A DNA stretch of 62,119 nt, counting the filler, from Bipalium vagum (lineage: Eukaryota), in NCBI GenBank assembly GCA_037834085.1. It is 3 parts of 3 records of this genome, joined end to end, with 100 filler letters (N's around TTAATTAATTAA, not from the genome) between each part and the next. Parts side by side here need not be neighbours in the genome. Positions count along the whole stretch, not along the records: positions 46,368 to 62,119 come from JBBMKC010147980.1; 2 more parts are not named here. One strand, 5' to 3'. Shown piece after piece: positions 2,791-62,119 of the stretch. A program made the position numbers and the translations under genes. Position 1 is the first letter of the stretch, and every line of letters begins with the position of its first letter. The notes under the pieces were generated by a model. The model ran no database searches and was not told the DNA's origin. It was given only the letters and a program-made list of their open reading frames with translations.

Positions 2791-3436
2791 AGGTGTATGA
2801 TAATAATAAAATTATTAAATTTATAACTAGTAGTAGGAATTCAAAATTTTAGTCTATCTTTTCCCTCACTAATGATTGAAAGCATTTTTTATCGATCCTA
2901 GTGCGATAAAGACGTAGATTGGTATCTTTTCCAACAAAATTTTAAATTCTAAGAATTCGAATTAATTAAATATAAATATAAACTGCTAATAAAAACTTGG
3001 TTGAACATGCTGCAGGTATTTCGAATGAGATCCAAAAATTGTATAAAAATTATATTAAAATAAAAATTAGTTTATACGAAAATTGTATATTATATTAAAA
3101 TAATCACTCATATTGTATACATATTTAATATTATTAAACTAGGTATATTGGTTTAAGCCTCAAAGATTTATAAAATGTTTAAATATTGAAGACAACTAAT
3201 GAATTTCTATAAAAGGTAATTTCAGAATTGATTTGCTATTAATAAACAATTTACGGCAATATGGACTTTTTCTAAATGCTTTCCTATTAAACCTTTAGGA
3301 ATTTTTGATAAAACCCCTTATTATACTAATCGAATAATATTTAGATGATTTAACTGAGATTTTTATTTTAACTTTATTAAAGATAAATTTAGTATGAAAA
3401 TTGTTTAAATAATTTGTTTCGTTTTTTTTTAAACAA

Positions 3437-3861
3437 ATGTTTCGAAATTTTTGCAATTTAAAATATTTTATTTTAAAAAATTTTCATGTTGTGGTACTGA
3501 GTAATTATATTTCAATTTTTTTTATTATGGTTTTTAGGTTAATAGTCATAAGCCGATGATTAAATTTCCAGCAAGACATCAAAATGGTAATCTAATGAGA
3601 TAATTTTATCATTTTAATAATGCTCTTAGTGAATAGTTTTAAATTAAGTGATTCACTTATATCGAATGAAAGTAAAACGGGTTCCTCTACCTTCACTGTT
3701 AAATGTAGTATTTTGCCTGAAAATGCCATATCTTCAAACCAACTTGATAAAAAGTATCACAGGAAGCCATTATCTGTTGAAGAAATAGAAGCTATTAAGG
3801 TAAATTGATATTTTTTTTCAGTTTAATTTATATGATCTAGAACGGAGATGTTACGTCGTAA
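3437..3861 (+). CDS. MRPS36: MRPS36/KGD4 (alpha-ketoglutarate dehydrogenase adaptor subunit)
   Basis: Exons 3437-3493, 3538-3586, 3630-3799, 3841-3861 (introns 44, 43, 41 bp) give MFRNFCNLKYFILKNFHVV|VNSHKPMIKFPARHQN|V...QLDKKYHRKPLSVEEIEAIK|NGDVTS*. This matches the family motifs HxPLIRFPxR and LPQKYRRKxxSxEExExIxxGG. Confidence 0.8.
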
Positions 3862-46367: not shown

Positions 46368-48318
46368 AAGTTGATTTTTAAAAAAGTTATGACTTCTTAA
46401 AGTATATGGTTATAAACCGCAATTACTCTTTTGGAAACCTAATAGTAACAATATTCTTAAATAATTCAATTTTGCTTAATTTGAAATATATAATCATATT
46501 TCAAACTATTTATGACAAACGATTAAAATAAATATTCTATTTTTTATTATTTATATTATTTCCATTATTTAAATTATTATATTCTTATTTATAAATTTCT
46601 TAATTATAATTTATAATTTACTGTTAGTTTTTTATAAGTAAATATTTTTAATGATTTTTAATATAAAAATTGTTTTTGTTTTATACTAATAATATTAATA
46701 ATTATTATAAAATAATAAATATTTTTGTTTTTATTTTGTTTATTTTTCTTTTTGCCTATTTTAATTTTTATGGGAATTTTTTTGACATAAAAAATAAAAT
46801 AATAAAAACTCAATTAAACTTAATAATAGTATAACAAAAATATAATAATGCCACAAATAACCGAATATTATGATGATGATTGATTGACAACGAGCTTTAT
46901 CTCTTCACATATTAATTCTTACTATTTAATAAGTAGACTAAATAATTAAATTAAGATAATTTCCAAATAAAGTTAAAGGGTCGATCTATCGTTATACAGA
47001 CACACACAACTCCGATTGTTAATAGTGAAGTTAATAGTCATGAGCTAGTGACTACATACTTATTGGATTGAGTTCGTTCAGTTCCCCTTAAAAACTGGTG
47101 GTCATTCTAGAATTTAGCTCATCTGACAACCAAGTGAAGCAAAGCGCCTTTGGTGTGGTTATCTATCAGAAGGTTTGAACATAAAAATTGTTTATATGAA
47201 AACCCACATTTCTTTTAGATTTGTTTTTTATATGATTATCTACATTATATATAAAATATATAATAACAAAATTATTATTATTTGTCAAATTATTTATATT
47301 CTAAATAATGATAAAGTAATGTTTAATTTTAAAGGATTATTTACAAATAGCACCATACATACACACATACAACTTAGCTTCATTGTTATTACTGTAAATT
47401 GTAATTGCACAGTTTTATTTATAAGTAGTATATTCATGATGAAAAAATTAATTTTAATTATTTATATTTACATTTTAAAATTAATAAAGTATAACTTTAA
47501 TAATTATAGTATAACCAAGATGTTCGGAATGCTTAAATCATTAGTAACAATTTTTGCGAATAAATTTCGAATTCAAATGGAAGCACTGAAAATATTTGTC
47601 TACATTAAATATTTTAGAAATAATTGATTAATTGATAACAGAATAAATAATAAAATAAACGATATTTATTTTCACGAGTTCCAAAAAAGATCGATAAATA
47701 TATCGGAAATAATGCGAAGAATAAACAGTCTCAAAAATACAAAACAAAAGATCAGAAATGTAACATCAATGAGAAGTGAAAAAATAAAAAATCATTTTCA
47801 CCCACCAATAACGTATAAACCCAAAAATTGAAATTATAAAGTTCCAGCATTCTTCTACTATTTTGTCATTCATTGAAAATAACCCAAAACCCCAAAGAAT
47901 GCCCTAAAAATCAATCACAATGAAAATATTTCCCAGCGAAAACATTTGTGAAAAATTAATTATATTTTCGCAATTTTGTTGTTCGTGAGTGTGATTTATT
48001 ATTTATTTGTGATGATGTTCAGGAGGCAGGGGTGAAGGAGGCCGGCAAGTAAAAAAACTCGATCTAAAAACAAAAATCTAATGACGAAAACAATTATGAT
48101 TGTCCGAGAAAATGAAGTTAAAAGAAATCAATATTAACGAAACAAAATAATAGGAAAAGTTACAAATCCAAATGATAATAATTTATTCTCTCTTAATATT
48201 AATTTTGTTGATTCGCGGACTGTGCGTGCACACCCAAAACAACGTCTCGGTAGTATAATAATAATATCGATAATAAATATTGATTCTGATCGATACCGGA
48301 AAAATATCGACTACCCCT

Positions 48319-49533
48319 TCACCAGATTCGATTGTGAGCATAGTGTCGAGCCAGGCCCAATGAATAGTTGTAGTCGGTGGGTTTGGAATGGAAAGCTCTG
48401 TTGAAAGGTATTAGTTGTTTCAGATCCTCGTAATGAGGACGATGGTTGCCACTTAACAACGAACTACAAAAATAGAAAGGGATAAATTTTATAAAAAATC
48501 AATAATAGAAAATAATCACAGACCCCGGAAACGAAAGTCAAATGTTATACATAATCATTTTGAATATTATTACCTGTTTCTGTCGTACTGATTTGTATTG
48601 ATGACTTTGGGTAATATCTCCTTGACAATGACGACGTTGCCAGACTGATCGTTCTTCGGTTTGTTCCGCTGGTCTATCGTGAACTGAGATAAGTGATTGT
48701 CATTGGATTCTGGGGTACTGGAAGTGGTTCCAGTACGAAGTTGGTTAAGGTACCATTGATTCTGTCGAGTACCATCGCCCCGGGGCAACAACGGGGGATC
48801 TGAAGATGAAATTATCAATTTATCTACATTGTCGACAATTTTGAGCTTCAGCACTGGTGCTAAGGACAAGAACACCTACCCAAACCCGATGCATTGATTT
48901 TTACCGAAACATTCACCGGTGCCACATTGACATCTCGATCTCTCCGTTCATGGGATTGGTCGGTTGATATGATTTGTTCGGGCGACGCATAAGTCGATTT
49001 CAATGGTACGACCGAAATCGGTGTTTTGCGCTGTTCCAAAAGTCCAACGGTGGAATTCTGTCGACTGAAAAGTGAGAGATGATTAAAGATATATGATATT
49101 TTTATCAATAAAAAAAGTCGAATGAATCCATTACAGCTGATGTCGTGGAACTGCGGAATTGTTCGTCTGAAAAGTGAGCGTGCACAAAACATTTTGTCAA
49201 ACTCAATGAATTCTGTATAGAAATAATTTTACCGAAAATGGAGAAGACGTGCAATACTTGACAGTGTTTCTGGAATTTGCAGTTCTTGAGTCTGAGAATG
49301 GAATTAAATTAATGAATACTTTTTAAAAGCCGTAAAGGTTTTTATTACTCGGGAGATCTGAAAAAAATTTCTGAAACACAACGAAATTGTTAGACTGGCC
49401 AATCGGTTCTGTCAGTTGATAATGCTTAGCCAGAAATGAGAGGAATTTTGTAGAAGGCCGATCAATGGCCAAATTGTAAGGTTTTAAGTTCTCATTCTGT
49501 ATGAATTATTTTATTGTTAACGAGCATTTATAG

Positions 49534-49577
<44 letters not shown>

Positions 49578-51159
49578 ATTAATATAACAATGATACCATG
49601 ATGAGTTTATCAGATAAATGGCGAAAGGTTATCGAGTAAAATGAAACATATTTGATTCAATGAAGTTAATTTGTTAAAGGAAAAAAGTTTTTTGGTTTTT
49701 TAATTAAGAAACTGGGAAAACTCTGTAGGTCATATTAACATTAAGACATACCATACTAAAGAACTTTTACAAAAAACATTATTTAAGCTTCCATAATCTT
49801 TGCAATAGTTTAACAGTTTCATAAATATTCCATCATTTTCTTTTCTCTTTGAGAAAGCCAAACTACCACCATTACCTATAGTATTCATATTTTTCTATCA
49901 GACTCATACTGCAAGATAATAAATCAAAATTTCTTTTCCTTTTATTTGTATAATTATTGATTTAATTTAATTGATTTAATATAATTTATTAACTATTTAT
50001 GTTTATTAATTATTTATTTAATAAATTAATTTATTGTTCAAATTTTAAATTTTTAGGTTTTAAAATTATGAATGTATTGATCTTTATTAAATATTTTTAT
50101 CAATATATCTTTCTGGATTTAAATTTCAGTGTGACACGTTACCAAAATTCAATTAATGAGCTCTTTTTGAGACCATTTACGTTCCTTTTTATTTTAATCC
50201 ATTGATATTTTACAGAAAAATCGGTTTGAGTTGATTACTAAAAAATACTTCTGCAATTGTGCAGGGCTGTCCCCTCACATTTTCTGAAAAATTGTATTTT
50301 TCAGAAAATGTCTCATTGGTCAATATGTTATTCTAACAATTCATAGCTTGCAGTTTTATCAAGATTTGGCAGGTGCAATCAATAAAACGTTGAGATATGC
50401 CCACTGGGAAATGACTAATTCAATTTTTTTTAAAATGATTAAATTTCTAATCTAACGTTTTAGAAAGTATTAATTCATTTTTGATTTTTTCAATCTCTTT
50501 GTTCTTGAGCATAAATCACCGATTCAAAATATAATAAATTTAACGAAACATTCAATGACAACAGATTAAATTCTAATCATTTTTTTAAAAAAAGTAGTCT
50601 ATAATAAGCATTCATTAAAAAACGACACCTTGAGCATAAATTCAAATATCTGCTTCCCGTATCCCTGGCGTTGCTTGGTTTCATGGATGTAAAAGTCCAA
50701 AATGCACATTGGTGTGGTTTCAAAATGATTTCCCATTATGTCATATAGAAATAATTTCTTATATCCAACTTTTAACAAACCTACTACTTCTCCGTCATTG
50801 CTAATTGTTAAACAATAATACTGACAATAAGAAAAAATTAATAACTTATTCGATGAACTATTTTTAGAAATATATAATCTATGATCAGAGTTTTTCAATT
50901 TACTTCCAGTAGTTATTACAACTGGCAGGTTTTGAGCCAGCTTTGAAGCTTTACCCATTTCATCTATGATATAACTTAGTTTTTGTGAATTTTGAAGATT
51001 TCTAAAATTGTAAATTTCAAATTTTACATTTTTAAATAATTGAAATTACTTCACAGATTTTGCATCAACATTGTGATAATAGTAATCTAAATTTGATTTA
51101 TTGTCAATAATTTCAATTGAATTTCTTAAGATATCATTTACATTAAAATTAAATTGCAT
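48319..51159 (-). CDS. ATAT1: Alpha-tubulin N-acetyltransferase 1 (MEC-17)
   Basis: Exons 51159-51050, 51001-50846, 50800-50629, 49496-49349, 49291-49233, 49166-49135, 49064-~48880, 48859-48574, 48463-48319. Motifs [84 protein letters not shown]; ends RHYAHNRIW*. Confidence 0.95.
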
Positions 51160-51589
51160 TTTTAGTAATTTTAAATTTTTTTAACTGATTATGACTTTTA
51201 CTTAGGGAACATATCTTATTTGATACATTTAAACAAATTAATTTGACTTAATAGATCACTAAATTTTCTTTAAATGTTATTAATCACATAAATCCAAGTC
51301 AAGCTTTAATGTTTTATTATTATTACAATAAAAATATAATGATAAAATATAAATTTTTAAGTGAATTATAATATTTTTTATATATTTTAATTTTAAATTA
51401 AGTATGACAATTTTTAATTTGTAAATTCATTTCAAAAACTACCATTTTTTGGAAACATTATTATGTCTGTTATAAAAAATGGCTGAAAGATAAAGTGAAA
51501 TAAAATTATAATCTTAATAAAATTCAAATAACTAAAAATACTCGATTAATTAACATATATATAGTTAATATTTTAAAAATACTTAACTA

Positions 51590-52030
51590 AACATTCGCTC
51601 GATCTAACTCAAAAAATCTAATTGGTTGGATACTAAACGCAGAGCAATAAGCATTTAAGTCTAAATATTAATTTAAAATGCAATGAGAAATAACAATGTT
51701 CACGTCCACAATTTATGAAAAGAAATAATAAAAGAAAAGTGCAACTATTTCCCATGAAACCTCAGTGACGGAATAAACTATCACGTGATTCCGCGAATAC
51801 TTCATCCACCGAATATTTAATTAACGATAATTAACAAAACACGTCGATAAATGGAAAATGGTTCGATAGAAATATAACTCAAAAATCAAATAAATAATAT
51901 TCAGATGATTGAAAGCAAAAATGCAACGAAAATGTGGTGTTTGATAACCCTTGAGAAAAAATTTCCTTTTAAGATCTCCATGGCATATTATAGTCTCCGT
52001 CAATAGTTCACGACCTACATGTCACTATCA
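51590..52030. mobile_element. Possible LTR-retrotransposon integrase fragment
   Basis: Weak resemblance to integrase core motifs (e.g. ...IERMFS on the minus strand); heavily degraded. Confidence 0.3.
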
Positions 52031-52269
52031 AACCCATTGAATTTCTCCAAAATTAAAAAAGAAAGTGTTTAGTAACTTTAATGCTCAGTTTGTCATTCAA
52101 AATCAGAAATTATTTTGTTGAAGTCATGTATCTAAATAGTTTTAGATTGCCTAATGCAATTTCAAAACAATTTATTTAATATGAAAATCATAAAACCAAC
52201 ATCATTTTATATATATTAATAAACAACCAAACAAAATAAGAAAAACTAAAGCTAATAAAAATAACTACA

Positions 52270-52540
52270 TATTTACTCTTTTTGACACATGCCCTTACTG
52301 ATCAATGAAATAAAATTAGTTTTACCTTGATAACCTGGACAAATCGTCTAATCTCTGCTGCATAAATATGAAAAAGTGGTTGTATGGCGGATAGAACACA
52401 ACTTTCCAGCCGAATTCCTCGATTTTCGTCTGACATCTTTGCTTCATGTGGTTTAGAATTATCATGCAGCAATTTTCTCTTTTTTATATCAACTCCTGGA
52501 CGATAATGGACTTTTCATAGAAATCTGCTTGTGCTTTTAA
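52270..52540 (-). mobile_element. Mariner 3' remnant
   Basis: KLLHDNSKPHEA and LEEFGWKVV motifs. Confidence 0.7.
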
Positions 52541-52561
52541 ACTAAAAATGTTCAGCTAAAA

Positions 52562-53269
52562 ATGGAATTCAGAAAATGTAAACAATTTGAGCATATAAAA
52601 CTCATTGAAAATTCTAGAGAAATTCGTAATCAATATTATTCTCATTCGTGTAAACAATGTGTAAGTAATCAAGAAAGAAATTAAGAAGAGAGTTACATTG
52701 AGAAGAGACAAGAAAATGTTAGAATAATAAATCCATCATTAGATAATAAAATTTAATATAGATAAACAAATAACAGATTTTAGATATAGACTAAAACGAG
52801 ATTATTATGTTTATAAAAGTTCATGTAAAGAATGTGAAAAGGAATATGAAAAATAAGAAATCCAATATACAGGTATTATGAAAATCATAGGAAAAATTTT
52901 AGTATATCAAAAGAATTATGTAAAAAATAATCCTGATTTTTTATTTAAACAAAATATTCAAGGAAGTATTTTAAGACTTTTAAAAGAAGGTAAATCTTAA
53001 AATTGATAAATTAATTAGGAATTTTTCTTTTGGAATTTTTTGGAGAATGAAATGAGTTTAATTTTGATAAAAATATGAATTTGGTAAATCAAGGAAATTA
53101 TTGGTACGTTGATCACTTTCTATCAGTTTTATCATTTTATTTATCAATTGAAAAAAATGTTAAAATTTTTAAAAATTGGAAAGGTCTAAGACCAATAGAG
53201 CTAAAAGAAAATTTATCTAAAGATAATAAAATTGATATAACTCTATTTATTTTATCAAAGGAAAGCTGA
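52562..53269 (+). pseudogene. Virus-type HNH endonuclease, putative homing endonuclease, decayed
   Basis: MEFRKCKQ...HSCKQC...SSCKEC (CxxC pairs), then EFLENEMSFNFDKNMNLVNQGNYWYVDH...SFYL...KIFKNWKGLRPIELKENLSKDNKI. This resembles the MxWxNYGxxWHIDH...NWxNLxP....NLSK pattern of HNH endonucleases of large DNA viruses. Internal stops and frameshifts. Confidence 0.75.
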
Positions 53270-53290
53270 ATATTTTATTAACTTAAAACA

Positions 53291-53543
53291 TGCAACACCT
53301 TCAAATTGCGGGAATCTCCTAAAGTCTTCTTTTACTATTTCATCGGAGAAATCTTTTGAATGATCTCAGGTAATGACTGATCTCGGTAGTAAAAACAAAG
53401 AAGAATATATGGAAAATCAGCAGCTAAGATTAGAATATGGAGAAGGTTCAGAGACTGAACAGAGGTATACATGAGAAATCTAATCAATTTCAATGATTTC
53501 TTAAGACATAGTCTAGCTTGAATAGAAATAATCAAGAAGTCTG
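53291..53543 (+). ncRNA. Group I intron ribozyme core, IC1-like
   Basis: P AAATTGCGGGAA (53303-53314), Q AATCAGCAGC (53415-53424), R GTTCAGAGACTG (53446-53457), S AAGACATAGTCT (53503-53514). P3, P4, P5a/b/c, P7, P8, P9 and P9.0 pairings can be drawn; omega-G at 53543. Confidence 0.92.
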
Positions 53544-53760
53544 CCAGGAACAAATATTGATAACGTTTCGAAAATTATGAAGACGTTTCAGAAAATCCAA
53601 AAAGTAATTGATTATATTTTGATCCATATTTTGGAAAAGGATTAAAAGATGAAATTTTAAATAATTTAAAATATGATAATTTAGATAAATCTGAAAATAA
53701 AGAATTTAAAGAATTATTACAAAAATCGAGTAAGAATAAAATTAAGATTGTAAAAGAAGG
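53544..53760 (+). pseudogene. 3' exon of the intron's host gene (Polinton-like, PLA2-motif candidate)
   Basis: Starts CCA GGA ACA AAT ATT GAT (PGTNID), then after a frameshift RFENY...SN*LYFDPYFGKGL. Resembles the parvoviral-type PLA2 (Y/C)GPGT...KR motif and the GLYLxPY..GxGL motif of Maverick proteins. Confidence 0.5.
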
Positions 53761-54974
53761 AAATTGTGGGGACTCCCAGGCAAACTTCCAGCGATTTCAG
53801 GAGACGAAATATAATCCTTTTAAACATTTTCATGAATCTAGACATTTTTTGTGATTCTGTCAACCATTTTCTTTGTGTGATCTTTTATTACCTTTTGCAT
53901 GGAACAGAAATATTGTAAAAAGCTTTTTATTGTACATGTGTATAAAATATATGTTAAATAAATTATGTAAATTATTATTGATAAGTCCTGAAGCTATAAA
54001 TCATAAAATATAAAATAAATAAATAAAATTAAAATAATAAGTAATATTAAAATTAAAATAATGCTAAATTTAGAAAGTTCAGCAAAAATAATTACTAAAA
54101 ATAAAAATAATATTCTATAACCGAATAAATAATAAAAAAAATAATGTATAAAAAATTAAAATTAGTAAATTTAGATTACTAAAAATAATTAAAAGACAAA
54201 AAATTTTAATATAAATTAAACTGTCTATACTTATAAAACTCAGCAAAAAACGAGAAATAATTACAACGACATTAATTAAACGTCAACTAGAGTCTACATC
54301 AAATCAGAAACCGAATCCCAACCAGTCATTTAAACACAATTCACTTGATACGAAAATATCAAATATCGACTAGACTGTCAGAAATCGGATACAAAGAGAG
54401 AAAAGGAAAACTATATAAATTTGGGCAAAAATAATCACAAAAAGAGTGAGAAATTATAAATTCTCAGAGGAGGAAAACGACCGAAAAGGAACCATAAAGG
54501 AACGACGATAAAGAAACAAATTGAATAAACAGAAGAAGAAAAGGACTCAGACGAACAATCAAAGATTCAAGTCTCTAAAATGAAAATTCCAAAAGAACAA
54601 TCTCGAAAATCTTTCCGAAGGAAAATTAATAGACCGTATTTCGATTCAGAAGTATTACAGTCTAATCCGCAGATATAATATCCTTAAGTAATTATTTTGA
54701 TATTTATAAATTTTTAACAATCAGTAGTATCAATTTGATTTCAAGTTGAATATTACGATCATCTTTAAAATTAGCATGGATTATACAATTGGATAGATCC
54801 CCAAACGTCAAGTAGGACGGAGAAGCGATTTTTTATTTCGAGGGCTCTTTAAGCTAAGATTGCAAAGAGTATAACCTGATATCTTGAAGTTTAACCGGGA
54901 CTTATCATTAATAATAATATTGTTCTTATTTGTTCAACAAAGGTGTTAAAACTAAGTGTTAGGTTCAAATAAAT

Positions 54975-55046
54975 TGGAGACACCGGGATTCGAACCCGGG
55001 ACCTTTCTCATGCGCATGGACTGCTCTACCGCTGAGCTACGTCCCC
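54975..55046 (-). tRNA. tRNA-Ala(CGC)-like gene with disrupted anticodon stem (probable pseudogene)
   Basis: GGGGACGTAGCTCAGCGGTAGAGC A GTCCA TGCGCAT GAGAA AGGTCCCGGGTTCGAATCCCGGTGTCTCCA: A and B boxes, D and T arms and the G3:U70 Ala determinant are intact; only 2 of 5 anticodon-stem pairs form. Confidence 0.8.
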
Positions 55047-55369
55047 CATTCATTTTTAATCTAAACTCCTTACACTAAGTATCAATTATTTTTAAATCTA
55101 TATTAAAATAAATTTTTCAAAATCATATTAATTTGTTTTGATTTGTCTTAGTGATTAAAATTTTCATTTGGTAATATTCACTTTCAAATATTGGTTTTGT
55201 TTCATTTACACGCAAATTACAGTTACCTCGTCTATTTAAAAATTAAACATAAATAAACGCAACCTTTCACATAAACCAAACGTTACACTCTCTAAATCCT
55301 TCTGAAATAATAATATTAACAAGCGAGCCACGTAAAGTTTTGTAAGATCATCATAAAATCAAAAAACTT

Positions 55370-56060
55370 AACAAAATGGTTTATATTTTGACCCTTATGA
55401 AAAAAATTAAATATGTTTCTAAATATCATATTCAAAAATATCTCAATTTATGACTTTTAGAATTCGTTAGAATGCAACCAAAAATTTTGATATAATTTTA
55501 AAATTTTCTTACTTAAGCTTTTAGGAATAACTTTTTCAAAAAATGATGAAAAATTTATAATTGTTGATGAAATTTGTTGTGAAAGATGTGAAGATATCCA
55601 TACTGAAAATTGTAAGATCTGTGATTTAATTCATTTTTAATTCTTTCTCATAACTTTATATAATTCTGATTTAGAAAATACATATGAATAATTAAGTTTT
55701 AAATAAGAATCACCAATGATTATTGTGAAATTTTAAATTAAATTTGATCTATTTTCTGAATAAAATATTTTATTTTTTAAAAATGGAAGCATCTTTACAA
55801 AACGTATCAAATCTTTTATCTAAAAATGCTCAACACTGTTTATTATAGAAAGTAAAGGCTCAGACATATCATTTAAGTTAGGTACACCACTAAATCTTCA
55901 TCCAAATTATAAATATGAATTACCCTAAATTTATTTTTCAACTTATAATTCTATATTTAATATTAATGAAAAAATAATATAATATATCTAACTGTTACAG
56001 ATTCAAAAGGAAACAAAGTATCTCGAAAAATAAAGATAACTTCAGCAGCATTTGGGATTT
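55370..56060 (+). pseudogene. Polinton-like remnant including minor capsid (penton) N-terminus
   Basis: QNGLYFDPY near 55372-55400; a short Cys-rich fragment ICCERCEDIHTENCKIC; from 55783 MEASLQ.../FIIESKGSDISFKLGTPLNLHPNYKYELP*IYFSTYNSIFNINEKNN, matching the penton N-terminal P.L...YE..L....YNSI.NI...NN pattern. Confidence 0.6.
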
Positions 56061-56733
56061 TTGATATCTTCATATATTGTGAATGGATTTAAAATATTTT
56101 ATAAAAAAAAATTATAAATAATTTTATAAAAAAATAATAAATTTATAATAAAAAAATTTATAAAATATTTATTTATAAAATATATATGTAGATACGGTGA
56201 TATATAAAATCTCCAAATATATAATTTAGCATAAAATTCTATGAAAGTTTGAGTAGAAATTTCATCTTTATAAGAAGTAATACATCAAGTTTTAAAGAAT
56301 CTTAATTTATATCTCACATCTTCGAAATTTCATTATTATCTAGAATTAACTCTACAAATACAGAATACGTATTTTGCGAGTTCTAAGGCATGGTATTTTA
56401 CAAATAATCTTAATGTCTGTAATTTCATCGAAAGTAATATTTTCATTGTTGTAAAAATAAATGTAAAACAAAAACATCAGTGTTACATAATCCCCATATA
56501 TACTTTATTATTTATTATTAATAAATCAACCGTTATTTAATTGTATGAAATACTATTGTCTTTAAGAACTCTCATTTGATTTTAACTTTAAACTATTATA
56601 TTTATTAAATTAAATCATCAAATTTGTCAAAGTTAATTATGAAAGGAAAGTTAATTTATAAAATTGATTTTCAGATAAATCAGATAATTCAATTTCCTGA
56701 TTTCATAACTATAGTAATTGAATCCATCTTCAT

Positions 56734-59700
56734 ATGAGAGAAATTGTGCACATTCAAGTAGGTCAATGTGGCAATCAAATGGGTGGAAAAGTATTTCTTT
56801 GATGTCTTAAATCTTGCGATATAATATTTTATTATTATACTTAAGTTTTGGGAGGTAATCTCTGATGAACATGGCATCAGTGTGGATGGATTTTATAAAG
56901 GTGACAGTGATTTACAGCTGGAAAGAATATGTGTATATTATAATGAAGCTACTGGTTCGATTTTTTCAAAACTTTTATAAATAATAATATCTTTTAAGGT
57001 GGAAAATTTGTTCCTCGTGCAATCCTTACGGATTTGGAACCTGGAACAATGGACTCCTTAAGATGTGGAGTAGTTGGAAACCTGTTTAGACCTGACAATT
57101 TTATTTTTGGCAGCACAGGGGCTGGTAATAATTGGGCCAAAGGACATTATACAGATGGAGCTGAACTAATTGATAATGTCATTGAAGTGGTTAGAAAAGA
57201 ATCAGAAAATTGTGAATGTTTGCAAGGATTTCAAATCATCCATGCGTTAGGTGGAGGAACTGGAGCAGGAATGGGAACACTGTTGATTAGTAAAATTAGA
57301 GAAGAGTTTCCTGATCGAATTGTTTGTAGCTTTTCATGTGTTCCATCTCCAAAGGTACCATGGTTAATTGGAATAATTAAAAGAATTTTTATATCATTAT
57401 AATATTGAGATTGTTAAAATTCTAAAATTTGGTACTTAAAAATAATTATTAAAAAACATAATACGCAGCAATTAAGTAATAATTATTTTTATATTTTTCA
57501 TCATAATTTATTTTTATTTTTATTATTATTTAATAATTTTTTTATAAAAATTGTATTCTTAGTTAAATAATTATTTATATTTATTATTTATTTATATTAA
57601 TAATTACATGAAAACCAAAGTTTCTCAGATTTCGAAAAAAGTAAAAATATGACAAGAAATCATAAATGGAGTTGTAATTGCGTGACCTCCATGATGAAGA
57701 AAAATAAACAATTTAATATGTTAAAATACATACCAAATAAAATTTCTGGAAAGCATTATTATTTCATTCTCAAAGATAACTGAAACCGAAACTTAACACT
57801 TTCAAGAATTTATAGTCATATTAAGACGAATACGAGTTGCAGAGCTCTTTTGAAGATTTTGAAATAGCGGTTATCATTACCAATAAGAGAAAAAATAGAA
57901 ATCAAAAGAAATACAGAAACAATGAAACCCATACAAATAAGAATTACTAACCTGCTTCATCAAATAAAGTATTGAGTTTAAACTTAATGGTTAAATGTGA
58001 ATGGGTAAACAATTAATGGTTTCATCTTAATTAAATTGCTTCTTTGGACTGGTATTTGAGTGACGAAAAACCCTTTTGATAATTTTTTTTAAAAATCAAT
58101 TCATTATGACAATCTATGAAACAATTAACGTTGTGTGATACCAAGCAAATCCAATATATCAATACCCAAATAGAGTACCTGAGATTCAAAAGAAATTTCT
58201 ATTTGGTATTATATTGGCTTAATAATAAAAAAATTTTAAAGAGTCAATATTGGACAAAGGAAAAGTGACAACTTTAATCAAAGCAATCTCAGTAATTATC
58301 TAGGTCTTTTTGTCATCTTATAGGTAAATTCTTTATCCCATCTTCATGATAGTGATGGACTTTGATATAAAAAGTCCAGGGCAGTTTTGATATCATCCTT
58401 TGTTGAAAATTGTCTACTACTTAGGTAATTTTGTTGAAATCTGAACAAGTGATAATCTGAAGAGGTCATTTCAAATGAGTATACAAGCTAAGGAAGAAGT
58501 TACCATTCTAAATAATTAACTTTTTGAAATCACTCTCAAGTTTGGAGTCGAGCACTGTCATGTCAGAAATGTCATTCATTCTGTTGATCAGGTCTGGAGT
58601 TGCATTTTTCGATTCAACTTGGAGCTATCCTAATTGATCAGAGTAGACTTTTGCTTTGATAAACATGTTTTTGGCAATAACTCAAAATATATTACACTTC
58701 TATTATCCGATGAGGGTGAAGTGGCTTCTGACTCGGTGTTAGTTTTCCTTCTTTTAATATTAACCTGGCACATTCACTATTCTTTTTCAAAAGTTTTCTT
58801 TCTTGAATCTTGAAACAAAAGATGAGCAAAGCAACAACCTGTCATGTTTGGTTTTTTCACTCAACCAATGAAGAAACCAAAACCCTTTTCACTTAATTAT
58901 TTTATTTAGTGAAGATGAATTTCAATGGTGGTGTGAGAGACTTGCAGAAAATCCAATATTGTGATAATTGTTTAAAATAATTTTTAAATTAGTTTTCTAA
59001 TAAATTATATTACTTGCCTTTTGAACTTTACAAGCCAATATTATGAAGTCCTAAAACCTTCTGAATAAATAATTCGTTAGCATATTAATCAATACTATTT
59101 CATTCGAAGCAAAATTTGTTCCAAAGCAATTTGAATGAGTAAAACATGAAAAAATAATTACATGAAAAAAATAAGCAGTATTTTAAACAAATATTTATAA
59201 AGAGCATAATATAAACTTACAAATGATATAATTTATTGATCTAAACTTGACCTAAATAAAAAAACATCAAAAACCTGCATTTATATTGCATCGACCTAAT
59301 ATTACAGATTTTTAAACTAATTACTGAAATAAAAATCAAATTTTATAGTAAACTATTAAATTTGACTCGCTTATTACCATATCATTTTTAATAGGTCTCA
59401 GATGTCGTCGTTGAGCCATACAATGCTACCTTATCAATCCACCAATTAGTTGAGAATTGTGATGAAACATATTGCATTGACAATGAGGCATTATATGACA
59501 TTTGCAATCGAACCCTTAAATTAACCAGTCCTACATACGGTGATTTAAACCACTTAGTTAGTGCAACCATGTCAGGAGTCACAACATGCTTAAGATTTCC
59601 TGGTCAGTTAAATGCAGATCTGAGGAAATTAGCTACCAACATGATACCTTTTCCACGACTTCACTTTTTTATGCCTGGATTCTCTCCTTTAACAAGTCGT

Positions 59701-60192
59701 CATTCTCAACCATATCGTTGTTACTCTGTTCAAGATCTCACTCAACAAATGTTTGATTGCAAAAATATGATGGCGGCATGTGATCCTCGTCATGGTAAAT
59801 ATCTTACAGTAGCAGCAATGTTTCGTGGTAGGATGTCAATGAAAGAAGTGGATGAACAAATGCTAAACGTCCAAAACAAAAACAGTGCCTATTTTGTTGA
59901 ATGGATCCCAAATAATGTGAAGACTGCTGTTTGTGACATACCACCAAGAGGATTGAAAATGTCAGTTACATTTATTGGAAATAATACTGCTATTCAGGAA
60001 ATATTCAAAAGAGTTTGCGAGCAGTTTTCTGCTATGTTTCGCAGACGCGCTTTCTTGCACTGGTATACCGGAGAGGGGATGGATGAGATGGAATTTACAG
60101 AGGCTGAATCAAATCTTAATGATCTTATCAGTGAATATCAACAATTCCAGGATGCAACGGTTGATGATGAAATACAGGCAGCCGAAGCCTAA
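56734..60192 (+). CDS. TUBB: Beta-tubulin
   Basis: Exons 56734-56790, 56846-56954, 56999-57354, 59395-60192: [35 protein letters not shown], through [19 protein letters not shown]. Confidence 0.99.
58280..59301 (-). mobile_element. Decayed mariner in beta-tubulin intron 3
   Basis: Terminus TATTAGGTCGATGCAATA at ~59300; HDSARL and [10 protein letters not shown] motifs at ~58430-58565. Confidence 0.75.
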
Positions 60193-60879
60193 TAATTTAA
60201 TGTATAATTTCAACAGATGTCTTTAATTTATAAAAACCTCATTTAATGAGAATTTATTGTATATATAAAAACAGCTACTTAAAATGTTGCTTAATAAAAT
60301 TCATCTAAAAATTAATTTTAATAATAATTTCATGAAAATGATATTATTTTTATATTTTCAATATAAATATTTGAAAATTATATTCATTATTCAATTTTGT
60401 TTAATGACATCACTTTACGTGATTAAATTTTTAATATTTTTTAATTTTTAAAAAAATATTTTGTACACTATCAAAATAATAAAACACTATAAAAAAGATT
60501 AAGATTAAAAAGTCGTAATATTTTGGATAAATATATTTTTGAAGAAATAAACTAGTCTAAATATCAAACGAGATGTAATAAAGAATAAAGGACGATATTT
60601 CGCTAATAAATTTCAGTAAAACTGTTTTAAATGGTTACAATTTCTAAGATTATTGAAATTCAACATCAAATATTATTGAAATCCCGATTGGGATATGAAT
60701 TAAAATTTAATTCTGTTGCTCCAATAATTACATTAATTTAATAAATTATGCAAAATAATACTGAAAAGAAATTTTTTAAAAAATTATATTAAACATTATG
60801 GAAAAATGAAACAAGAAATAAAGATATGAGTAAAATAATTTTTACTATAGTTAAAAGACAAAAAAAGTCAAATATGTAT

Positions 60880-61960
60880 TCCAAATTACAGTTTTTCTTA
60901 AGGAAATTTTAATCAAAGGAGTTCCTGAAAGTTGGAACATCTTTAAATTAAGAAAATCATTAGCTTTTAGATCTTAACATACTTTACAATTTTTATAATA
61001 TTTTATGTAAGCAATAACATTTTGAAAAAGGTAACATGATTATTTTGTAAATGTCGGGAACGTCATTTACGGATTCTAAATCAAAAACTAATCCAAATCC
61101 TGGAATTGGTTTAAAATATATATGGAGCAAGTCCCCATAGTGGATGACTTCAACCAATATCTTTATTTTTGATTGCCTCAAGGCCAAGGTAAAAGAATAG
61201 GAGTGGACAAGATCCTTGACGGGGTTTTGAAAGATTTCCAGCTGGTATTCAAATCCCAAAATATTCTTACATTCTAGGCTTCTATTCCACTTTAAAAATA
61301 GAGTGGTGGATACCCAAACACTGTCATTATCTTTGGCTAGACCGGGTGAGGGGAGGAAAAAAGGGTGGGATTTGATGAGCTTGTCAGAAAGACACTGAAA
61401 TCAATAACCGACACGACATTGATCCAAAGTGCAAATATTTCATATTTGTATACGGCATTTGGTGATTTCGGTATAGTTCCTGGGAACGATGAGTACCAAG
61501 TTTGCAATGTGGTGCAGGGACTAAGATTTCTGACGATCAATGAACAGCAATGCAGGTCACTCTTGACCCAATCCATATTTAATAATATAAAGAAAAGGTT
61601 CCGTATAGAAATCTCGGTCTAACATTGAGATGGCTCAGCGATAAGCTTGATCTTAATGCTCAGAACACATGGTGGACCACGCCATGGGTTTCCGTGAAGG
61701 CTCTCCGATCCATAAGTATAGAATACGAATTCACTACTACAACAGGTGAATGAGTCATGTGAGCCAAGGTTGAGTTTTTGGTTGTTCCTCAAAAGAGCAT
61801 GCAGCGCATTGGTTTTTCATGATTAAATCACGGAGCAACAATTTGGCGCTTAAGTTTTGTCCTCTGAACATTGTGAAGGGGCGAGACATCCAATGCAGAC
61901 TCTGCAAAACTACAGTGGTGTTGGGTTAGCCAAGGACACATCCCTGTACACCCTTGTAAA
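60880..61960 (-). mobile_element. Decayed LTR-retrotransposon pol (RNase H / integrase zinc finger) remnant
   Basis: GC-richer decayed coding region; EVIHYGDLLH...NVIAYIKYYKNCKVC resembles the integrase HHCC region. Many stops. Confidence 0.5.
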
Positions 61961-62047
61961 AATTATATGTTAGAGACCGCAATAGGGTCTAGATTAGTTA
62001 TAATTATTATAAATTAATTATTAATACCGCAAAAGGATCAAAGGTAA

Positions 62048-62048
<1 letters not shown>

Positions 62049-62119
<71 letters not shown>
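62049..62119. repeat. (AAT)n microsatellite
   Basis: Pure AAT run to the window end. Confidence 0.95.

What the first reader, a model, noticed from the sequence alone, without database searches (positions are those of the whole stretch)
53291..53543. Near-intact IC1-type group I intron core in animal nuclear DNA, outside rDNA
Seen directly: P, Q, R and S occur in order with normal spacing. Pairings are P3 ACCTT(53297)/GAGGT(53462); P4 TTGCGG/CAGCAG (one mismatch); P5a TCTTCTTT/AAAGAAGA and TACTAT/GTAGTA with an A-rich bulge AAAAC; P5b capped by GAAA; P5c TCAG/CTGA; P7 GACTG/TAGTC with the bulged A and G-C guanosine-binding pair; P8 AGAAATC/GATTTCT; P9 CTTGA/TCAAG with a GAAA loop; P9.0 AG/CT just before omega-G 53543. 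Established: nuclear group I introns are essentially confined to rDNA of fungi, algae and protists, protein-gene group I introns occur in organelles, phages and large DNA viruses, and animal examples are known from mitochondria of non-bilaterians. Here the flanks are not rRNA and the locus sits between two spliceosomal-intron animal genes. Inference: the intron arrived inside an endogenised virus/Polinton gene. I do not know of a described equivalent but cannot search the literature.
Basis: partly seen in the sequence, partly recalled or inferred. Interest (0 to 1): 0.95.

Follow-up and report, generated by a model that had tools for sequence, protein, structure and literature searches.

The report
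Giant-virus intron relic in animal DNA
A stretch of about 0.8-1 kb between two ordinary animal-type genes is the leftover of a self-splicing (group I) intron and its homing-endonuclease gene, of the kind that lives in the capsid genes of giant viruses. It is a viral fossil, not a working animal intron.

Summary
A profile built only from 13 giant-virus introns hits it at E 2e-40. Its relatives are small group I introns packed into the major capsid protein (MCP) genes of Mimiviridae-like giant-virus contigs from IMG/VR. Directly upstream lies a broken HNH-type homing-endonuclease gene of the family that accompanies those viral introns. The flanks are not rRNA, organellar or MCP exons. The neighbours are ATAT1 and a beta-tubulin gene with GT..AG introns. 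The ribozyme core is well kept: 61 of 65 family-invariant bases and 34 of 39 core pairs. No 5' splice site, P1 5' strand or exon context can be shown, distal P6 and lower P8 are weakened, and the endonuclease gene is untranslatable. The best reading is a non-functional endogenous fragment of a giant-virus mobile intron in intergenic DNA. 'Inside a gene', 'Polinton' and 'IC1' are not shown. This is a new member of a known kind, of moderate interest. Host species and read-level support could not be checked.

The parts
52737..53269 (+). Remnant of an HNH-family homing-endonuclease gene, broken and given here as one part. It is firm from about 53000, probable from 52737, and possibly starts near 52560. 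The last 72 codons (53051-53266) are open and carry the HNH motif region.
   Evidence: tblastn to viral ORFs gives 35-50% identity over 60-79 aa. The viral ORFs match PHROG endonuclease VII / HNH at 6e-14. Alignment A5 keeps 5 of the 6 columns invariant in the viral ORFs (A4), and one is lost. A profile of the N-terminal half scores 14.3 bits upstream in another frame, and 0 of 300 local shuffles reach it. About 15 in-frame stops lie upstream of the open stretch if read in its frame. The alternative reading needs at least one frameshift and an internal deletion of about 50 codons.
53262..53548 (+). Group I ribozyme remnant. It runs from the stretch homologous to the viral internal guide region through P2, P3, P4, P5/P5abc, P6, P7, P8 and P9 to a short tail with candidate terminal G residues.
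   Evidence: Rfam RF00028 39.3 bits. Viral-intron profile E 2.3e-40 at 53270-53533. Alignments A1 and A3. Pair counts.
53325..53404 (+). P5abc-like extension: two-part P5a with an A-rich bulge, P5b closed by a GAAA loop, and P5c.
   Evidence: Helices verified and recovered by the free-energy fold. P5a pairs are 10/10 in the window and covary in the family.
53448..53513 (+). P7 (both strands), the P3 3' strand and P8, which together form the catalytic centre with the guanosine-binding helix.
Evidence: P7 6/6 pairs. P8 upper 4/4 and lower 1/4 in the family register.
53517..53536 (+). P9 hairpin with a GAAA loop.
   Evidence: The same hairpin type occurs in the viral relatives (A1).
49356..51159 (-). 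Neighbour: ATAT1 (Mec-17) exons at 50629-51159 and 49356-49505. The protein's N-terminus lies at the 51159 end.
   Evidence: Pfam Acetyltransf_16 5.6e-36. PDB ATAT1 chains 1.6e-28. tblastn with vertebrate ATAT1.
56998..60189 (+). Neighbour: beta-tubulin gene. Exons end near 57353 and resume at 59395, separated by a GT..AG intron of about 2 kb. Earlier exons lie around 56700-56950.
   Evidence: Pfam Tubulin and Tubulin_C. PDB beta-tubulin chains 5e-161. Splice boundaries read.

Best explanation
The region from about 52.6/52.7 kb to 53.55 kb is an endogenous, non-functional fragment of a mobile group I intron. It consists of a broken HNH-type homing-endonuclease gene followed directly by the ribozyme (guide-region homologue, P2-P9 with a P5abc extension). 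It belongs to the intron family that colonises the major capsid protein genes of Mimiviridae-like giant viruses. In the virus (established for relatives, inferred here) the ribozyme folds, binds guanosine in P7 and splices itself out of the capsid pre-mRNA. The endonuclease cuts intron-less copies of the gene so that the intron is copied in. In this genome a piece of such viral DNA was joined into intergenic DNA between ATAT1 and beta-tubulin (inferred; mechanism unknown, probably non-homologous end joining). It brought no recognisable capsid exon. It now lacks a demonstrable 5' splice site and has an untranslatable endonuclease gene. It therefore does nothing except record past contact with a giant virus.
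For: Ribozyme homology: blastn gives 62-70% identity over 250-270 nt, including P5abc, to introns in IMG/VR contigs; the best is L163 at E 4e-26. The viral-only profile scores E 2.3e-40. The structure is shared with strong covariation: 27 of 43 RNAalifold pairs are compensatory, and 95.5% of cells are paired against 79% in shuffles and 33-49% in slid controls.
Viral context of the relatives: they lie in or beside NCLDV capsid exons (Pfam Capsid_N and Capsid_NCLDV), on contigs of up to 548-720 kb, in arrays of up to about 19 introns per 10 kb.
Endonuclease: the window ORF is homologous to viral ORFs lying directly 5' of ribozymes. The family has 439 confirmed members in IMG/VR, and 67 of the 80 kept loci have MCP exons within 3 kb. 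The same order, endonuclease then ribozyme, is seen in L104:2089-2944 and in L008.
Host context: ATAT1 and an intron-bearing beta-tubulin gene lie on either side.
Decay: broken endonuclease gene, 8 of 47 conserved pairs not formed, and a lower Rfam score than most of the viral introns scanned (39 against 60-101 for most, with a few viral copies as low as 30-49).
Literature: endonuclease-bearing group I introns in giant-virus essential genes (PMC5871332), introns in the Mimivirus capsid gene (PMC2688009), and NCLDV inserts in Hydra, Daphnia and Exaiptasia assemblies (PMC5294986).
Against: No capsid or other viral exon is recognisable in the flanks, so the donor gene is inferred only from relatives. 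The closest viral relatives are only about 70% (RNA) and about 50% (protein) identical, so the donor lineage is not sampled. The ribozyme core is almost as well kept as in live viruses, and a 72-codon open stretch survives in DNA of 25% G+C. That fits a young insertion but does not exclude residual activity. Read-level support for the two junctions could not be examined. The host species was not identified: the best ATAT1 hits are vertebrate at about 49% identity, and exact-protein look-ups found nothing.
Confidence: 0.8

Rival explanations
1. It is still a working self-splicing intron (or free-standing ribozyme) that is transcribed in the animal, for example within an unannotated virus-derived or host transcript.
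For: 61 of 65 family-invariant bases are kept, P7 is 6/6, and P5abc, P9 and the tetraloops are intact. A 13-bp complementarity between 52545-52557 and the guide-region homologue at 53264-53276 could be a P1 that encloses the endonuclease gene in its loop.
Against: That helix is reached by 5% of shuffles and 6% of other real segments, and it has no U.G pair with the U on the 5' strand. No reading frame continues across the element. Distal P6 is 2/4, lower P8 1/4, P3 5/7 and P4 5/6. The endonuclease gene is broken. No exon homology exists.
Confidence: 0.04
2. Assembly artefact: reads of a giant virus (from a symbiont, prey or the water) were wrongly joined into a host contig.
For: Giant-virus DNA is known to contaminate animal assemblies (discussed in PMC5294986). 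The reads could not be inspected. Both virus and host are AT-rich, which favours mis-joins.
Against: Only about 0.8-1 kb is virus-like, and it has host-type sequence on both sides in one contig, so two false joins would be needed. The endonuclease gene is riddled with stops, unlike the full-length ORFs on viral contigs. No intact viral gene is adjacent.
Confidence: 0.05
3. The fragment came in with a smaller integrating element (polinton-like virus, virophage or a transposon that had captured it), not directly from a giant-virus genome.
For: Integrated polinton-like viruses of protists carry group I introns next to their capsid genes (PMC12220804). A possible mariner-type transposase remnant lies about 250 bp upstream on the other strand (52305-52514; a lead from memory, with no Pfam hit).
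Against: All informative relatives sit beside NCLDV-type capsid exons, many on contigs of 100-720 kb. No polinton, virophage or terminal-repeat signature surrounds the fragment.
Confidence: 0.08
4. It derives from an organellar (mitochondrial insert) or nuclear rDNA group I intron, of the animal itself or of a fungus or protist.
For: Group I introns in animals are otherwise known from mitochondria of non-bilaterians (PMC1618405, PMC5360047). P5abc extensions are typical of rDNA IC1 introns (general knowledge).
Against: No rRNA or organellar gene lies in the flanks. The specific full-length similarity and the adjoining HNH gene both point to giant-virus capsid-gene introns.
Confidence: 0.02

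Closest known systems
Homing-endonuclease-bearing group I introns in essential genes of Mimiviridae-like giant viruses (Bodo saltans virus RNA-polymerase genes, PMC5871332; Mimivirus capsid gene L425, PMC2688009)
   Same: The ribozyme fold is the same. An HNH endonuclease gene is attached. The pattern of endonuclease-bearing and endonuclease-free copies is the same. The nearest sequence relatives found here are introns of giant-virus capsid genes.
   Different: Here the element is outside any viral genome and any recognisable gene. Its endonuclease gene is broken and no splice-site context is demonstrable.
Giant-virus (NCLDV) inserts in eukaryotic genomes, including the few animal cases (Hydra vulgaris, Daphnia pulex MCP, Exaiptasia; PMC5294986)
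   Same: Virus-like DNA is flanked by intron-bearing host genes, which is the criterion used there for true insertion.
   Different: Those cases were found through viral core protein genes. This one holds no core gene, only an intron with its endonuclease remnant, so protein-based screens would miss it.
Group I introns in polinton-like viruses integrated in protist nuclear genomes (PMC12220804)
   Same: A group I intron sits in nuclear, non-rDNA DNA because a virus element carried it there, close to a capsid gene.
   Different: The host is different (animal-type genes here). The viral lineage is different (NCLDV-type capsid relatives). Here only a fragment is left.
Nuclear rDNA group I introns with P5abc (IC1, Tetrahymena type)
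   Same: The core is the same, and the P5abc-like extension has an A-rich bulge and a GNRA-capped P5b.
   Different: It is not in rDNA. P2.1 and P9.1/9.2 were not seen. Subgroup membership was not tested. The specific relatives are viral.
Mitochondrial group I introns of sponges, cnidarians and placozoans (PMC1618405, PMC5360047)
   Same: They are the only group I introns so far associated with animals.
   Different: Those lie in cox1 or nad5 and carry LAGLIDADG genes. Here the flanks are nuclear and the gene is HNH-type.

Membership tests
Group I intron (Rfam RF00028) | Covariance-model score at or above the curated gathering score (50 bits) | tested here: not met
   39.3 bits, E 3.2e-8, full model. 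Not listed at gathering or in the whole-piece run. A few viral copies also score 30-49 bits.
Group I intron (Rfam RF00028) | Conserved core P3-P4-P6 and P7-P3-P8 with the P, Q, R and S elements in order | tested here: met
   34 of 39 core pairs; 61 of 65 family-invariant bases.
Group I intron (Rfam RF00028) | Guanosine-binding P7 helix | tested here: met
   P7 is 6/6 pairs in the family register.
Group I intron (Rfam RF00028) | P1 formed by the internal guide and the 5' exon end, with U.G at the splice site | tested here: inconclusive
   Rfam's P1 has 2 non-pairs in 9 and lies in the endonuclease frame's tail. The candidate long-range P1 is not above chance and lacks the U.G pair.
Group I intron (Rfam RF00028) | Terminal G and a 3' exon that continues a gene | tested here: not met
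   Several G residues are possible at 53543-53548. The 3' flank shows no similarity to the viral last exon above shuffles and none to any viral ORF.
Group I intron (Rfam RF00028) | Self-splicing activity | not testable with these tools
   No expression or biochemical data are available.
IC1 subgroup | P5abc extension with A-rich bulge and GNRA L5b | tested here: met
IC1 subgroup | Remaining subgroup signatures (P2.1, P9.1/9.2, subgroup-specific models) | not testable with these tools
   Rfam has a single group I model. No second P2 or extra P9 helices were evident in the 53262-53548 fold, but this was not examined formally.
   E 2.3e-40, 131 bits; unseeded viral members score 146-231 bits.
   No capsid exon in the piece.
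HNH / endonuclease VII-like homing endonuclease (PHROG 1035 and relatives) | HNH motif region | tested here: met
   The window keeps 5 of the 6 columns invariant in the viral ORFs (A4; A5). The viral members match PHROG 1035 at 6e-14, with a weak His-Me finger hit to PDB 3fc3.
HNH / endonuclease VII-like homing endonuclease (PHROG 1035 and relatives) | Complete open reading frame | tested here: not met
   Only 72 codons are open. The upstream part has many stops or a frameshift plus a deletion.
Endogenous giant-virus element in a eukaryote | Virus-like DNA flanked by intron-bearing host genes on one contig | tested here: met
Endogenous giant-virus element in a eukaryote | Support from reads, other individuals or the orthologous locus | not testable with these tools
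   No reads or host assembly were available. Exact-protein look-ups were empty.

The most novel reading that the evidence does not exclude
The ribozyme is not dead. With 61 of 65 invariant bases and an intact P7, P5abc and P9, it may still fold and act. It may be transcribed upstream of ATAT1 as a working group I ribozyme in animal nuclear DNA, acquired from a giant virus.
Probability: 0.05. Interest if true: 0.85.

Novelty: new member of a known kind. Interest (0 to 1): 0.5.

Why it matters
Nuclear group I introns are held to be confined to rDNA of microbial eukaryotes (PMC8395846, PMC9223047). This is a real group I ribozyme sequence in animal-type nuclear DNA outside rDNA, and its route can be named: a mobile intron of a giant-virus capsid gene. 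Three things follow. First, giant-virus DNA can leave traces in animal genomes that contain no viral protein-core gene, so protein-based screens for viral inserts undercount them. Second, RNA models at curated thresholds also miss them: the score here is 39 bits against a cut-off of 50, and the hit is dropped by filters in a larger search. Third, the animal lineage, or something living in its germline environment, met a Mimiviridae-like virus. It does not show that animals use group I splicing.

Tried and rejected
Chance resemblance: rejected.
rRNA or other RNA family in the flanks: none.
Alternative genetic codes (mitochondrial, ciliate) to open the flanks: uninformative in DNA this AT-rich.
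Terminal or inverted repeats around the element: only weak AT-rich matches.
Capsid exons in the window: none by tblastn with viral capsid pieces, by all viral ORFs against the piece, by flank pieces against 196 viral loci, or by a junction-specific alignment test.
Permissive blastn of the flanks: swamped by AT-rich noise.
Host identification: ATAT1 exon search gave only about 49% vertebrate hits, and exact look-ups of two window ORFs were empty.
Exact 40-mer of the ribozyme in JGI metagenomes: none.
Close relatives of the endonuclease fragment in bacterial and archaeal genomes: none, at low sensitivity.
Family covariance model: build_rna_model failed internally, so an nhmmer profile was used instead.
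Free-energy z-scores: not informative.
Pfam on the endonuclease family: only noise-level hits.

Full report
1. What is in the sequence.
That covers P3, P4 with one mismatch, the two-part P5a with an A-rich bulge, P5c, P7, P8 and P9 (script). The free-energy fold recovers P2, P5abc, P8 and P9, but its z-score of -0.16 says nothing either way.

Rfam's group I model matches 53241-53535(+) over its full length at 39.3 bits and E 3.2e-8 when 1.3 kb is searched. The score is below the 50-bit gathering cut-off. The match is missing from the gathering run. It is also missing from an E-value run on the whole 15.7-kb piece, where the speed filters remove it. A routine annotation would therefore not report it.

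2. Surroundings.
- ATAT1/Mec-17 exons lie at 50629-51159 and 49356-49505 on the minus strand.
- A beta-tubulin gene lies at about 56.7-60.2 kb on the plus strand and has a GT..AG intron of about 2 kb.
- No rRNA and no organellar gene is present.

The best ATAT1 matches are vertebrate proteins at about 49% identity. The host looks like a non-vertebrate animal, but I could not name it.

3. Relatives of the ribozyme.
A scan of IMG/VR with a degenerate R...S pattern brought in 116 loci. The window's ribozyme aligns over 250-270 nt, P5abc included, at 62-66% identity with introns in several of them. After a second scan the best relative was L163 at 69.5% over 256 nt, E 4e-26.

These loci are giant-virus contigs:
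- L104 carries NCLDV capsid domains split by introns, GIY-YIG endonuclease genes and an HSP70 gene.
- The contigs reach 217-720 kb.
- The introns lie in or directly beside major capsid protein exons.
- The introns come in arrays: about 19 Rfam hits in 10 kb of L114 and about 10 in L008.

The closest endonuclease-free relatives occupy the last intron site of the capsid gene. A copy of the gene without that intron (L104) shows that the viral 5' splice site follows a U.

Thirteen viral introns share a structure with abundant compensatory change: 27 of 43 predicted pairs. With the window added and P3-P8 written by hand, including the P3/P7 pseudoknot, 95.5% of cells pair. That compares with 79% in shuffles (0 of 500 reach it) and 33-49% in slid controls. 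A sequence profile of the 13 viral introns alone hits the window at E 2.3e-40, 131 bits, at 53270-53533. Viral introns outside the seed score 146-231 bits. Membership of this viral intron family is therefore firm.

4. State of the ribozyme.
The window differs at 4 of the 65 columns that are invariant in the 13 viral introns. Leave-one-out values for the viruses are 0-4. Pair counts per helix are as follows.

| Helix | Pairs formed in the window |
|---|---|
| P3 | 5/7 |
| P4 | 5/6 |
| P5 | 3/3 |
| P5a | 10/10 |
| Proximal P6 | 3/3 |
| Distal P6 | 2/4 |
| P7 | 6/6 |
| Lower P8 | 1/4 |
| Upper P8 | 4/4 |

That makes 34 of 39 pairs in P3-P7, against 36-39 in the viruses. The core is only mildly eroded.

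What is missing is the 5' end. In the endonuclease-free viral relatives the P1 5' strand and splice site lie about 150 nt upstream of the guide region. In the window that space is taken by the endonuclease gene. Rfam's P1 is a weak helix inside the tail of that reading frame.

A 13-bp complementarity between 52545-52557 and the guide-region homologue at 53264-53276 would enclose the whole endonuclease gene in a P1 loop. However, 5% of shuffles and 6% of other real segments do as well, and it has no U.G pair with the U on the 5' strand. I leave it as a candidate. The 3' flank shows no similarity to the viral last exon beyond shuffles.

5. The gene next to it.
The 72-codon open stretch at 53051-53266 is 35-50% identical to ORFs of 175-316 aa in the viral loci. 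Several of these, such as L104:2089-2733 and copies in L008, lie directly 5' of a ribozyme. Those ORFs match PHROG endonuclease VII and HNH families at 6e-14. They give a weak His-Me finger hit in the PDB for their Cys-rich N-terminal part. Pfam gives only noise.

The HNH motif lies in the C-terminal part, which is the part the window keeps. Five of the six columns invariant in the viral ORFs are retained and one is lost.

Upstream, a family profile aligns colinearly back to about 52560 in the same frame, but through about 15 stops. A profile of the N-terminal half alone scores 14.3 bits at about 52737-52919 in another frame, and 0 of 300 local shuffles reach that score. Either way the gene is broken: many stops, or at least one frameshift plus an internal deletion of about 50 codons. 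It cannot make an endonuclease.

The family is large in IMG/VR, with 439 confirmed relatives, the best at 50-53% identity. Of the 80 loci kept, 67 have capsid exons within 3 kb. In many loci the same gene sits inside P5 instead of before P2 (alignment A7), so the gene module moves between loops.

6. Extent.
No other part of 51.2-54.9 kb resembles anything in the 196 viral loci, either as DNA or as protein. The recognisable viral DNA runs from about 52.6/52.7 kb to 53.55 kb.

7. Explanation.
The evidence fits an endogenous fragment of a giant-virus mobile intron (endonuclease gene plus ribozyme) in intergenic DNA, now inert. Shown: homology, shared structure, the viral context of the relatives, the host context and the broken gene. 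Inferred: that the donor was a giant virus and not another carrier, that the donor gene was a capsid gene, the joining mechanism, and inactivity. The rivals (live intron, mis-assembly, carriage by a smaller element, organellar or rDNA origin) are weighed in their own sections.

8. What is known.
- Endonuclease-bearing group I introns in giant-virus essential genes are described: HNH and GIY-YIG types with endonuclease-free offspring copies in PMC5871332, and Mimivirus capsid gene introns in PMC2688009.
- Giant-virus inserts exist in a few animal assemblies (PMC5294986).
- Group I introns occur in virus elements integrated in protist nuclei (PMC12220804).
- Nuclear group I introns are otherwise described as restricted to rDNA (PMC8395846, PMC9223047).

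I found no report of such a relic in an animal nuclear genome, but the library searched is incomplete. I rate it a new member of a known kind.

9. Limits and conduct.
The IC1 label, splicing activity, read support and the host species were not testable. 

Slips, declared as required:
- In my reasoning I also named the places of two in-frame stops of the endonuclease remnant and of individual unpaired positions in the ribozyme. They are not repeated here.

Noticed in passing
window 54975-55046 (-): A tRNA-like sequence, G+C-rich in AT-rich DNA, scores 48 bits with Rfam. ARAGORN cannot assign an anticodon, and the anticodon arm reads poorly. It may be a tRNA pseudogene or the head of a tRNA-derived repeat.
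   Followed up: partly
window 52305-52514 (-): A 70-codon open stretch contains a motif that recalls mariner/Tc1 transposases. This is a lead from memory only, and Pfam found nothing. It lies about 250 bp from the viral fragment.
   Followed up: partly
window 52545-52557 and 53264-53276: A 13-bp complementarity would enclose the whole endonuclease remnant as the loop of a P1 helix. It is not above chance (5-6%) and lacks the canonical U.G pair.
   Followed up: yes
L114:250-10700 (-), L008:330-7750 (-): The capsid genes of these viral contigs are extraordinarily intron-dense: about 19 and about 10 group I ribozymes on one strand within 10 kb, with exons of only tens of bases between some of them.
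   Followed up: partly
L153, L170, L134, L133, L189, L137, L143 around 3000-3500: The same HNH gene family sits inside the P5 loop of its ribozyme. In the window and in L104:2089-2944 it precedes P2. The gene module therefore occupies different loops in related introns.
   Followed up: partly
window 52800-54100 versus 46368-62119: The Rfam group I match appears only when a short stretch is searched. With the whole piece the filters drop it, although its E-value would still pass.
   Followed up: yes
window 61340-61618 (-): A weak Pfam hit to the second longin domain of FUZ/MON1/HPS1 (E 0.0024) may mark a third host gene at the right end of the piece.
   Followed up: no
window 62048-62119: A perfect AAT microsatellite of 24 copies runs to the end of the piece.
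   Followed up: no
window 53642-53715: An imperfect 24-bp tandem repeat of 3 copies lies just 3' of the ribozyme, inside an 80-codon open stretch with no family match.
   Followed up: no
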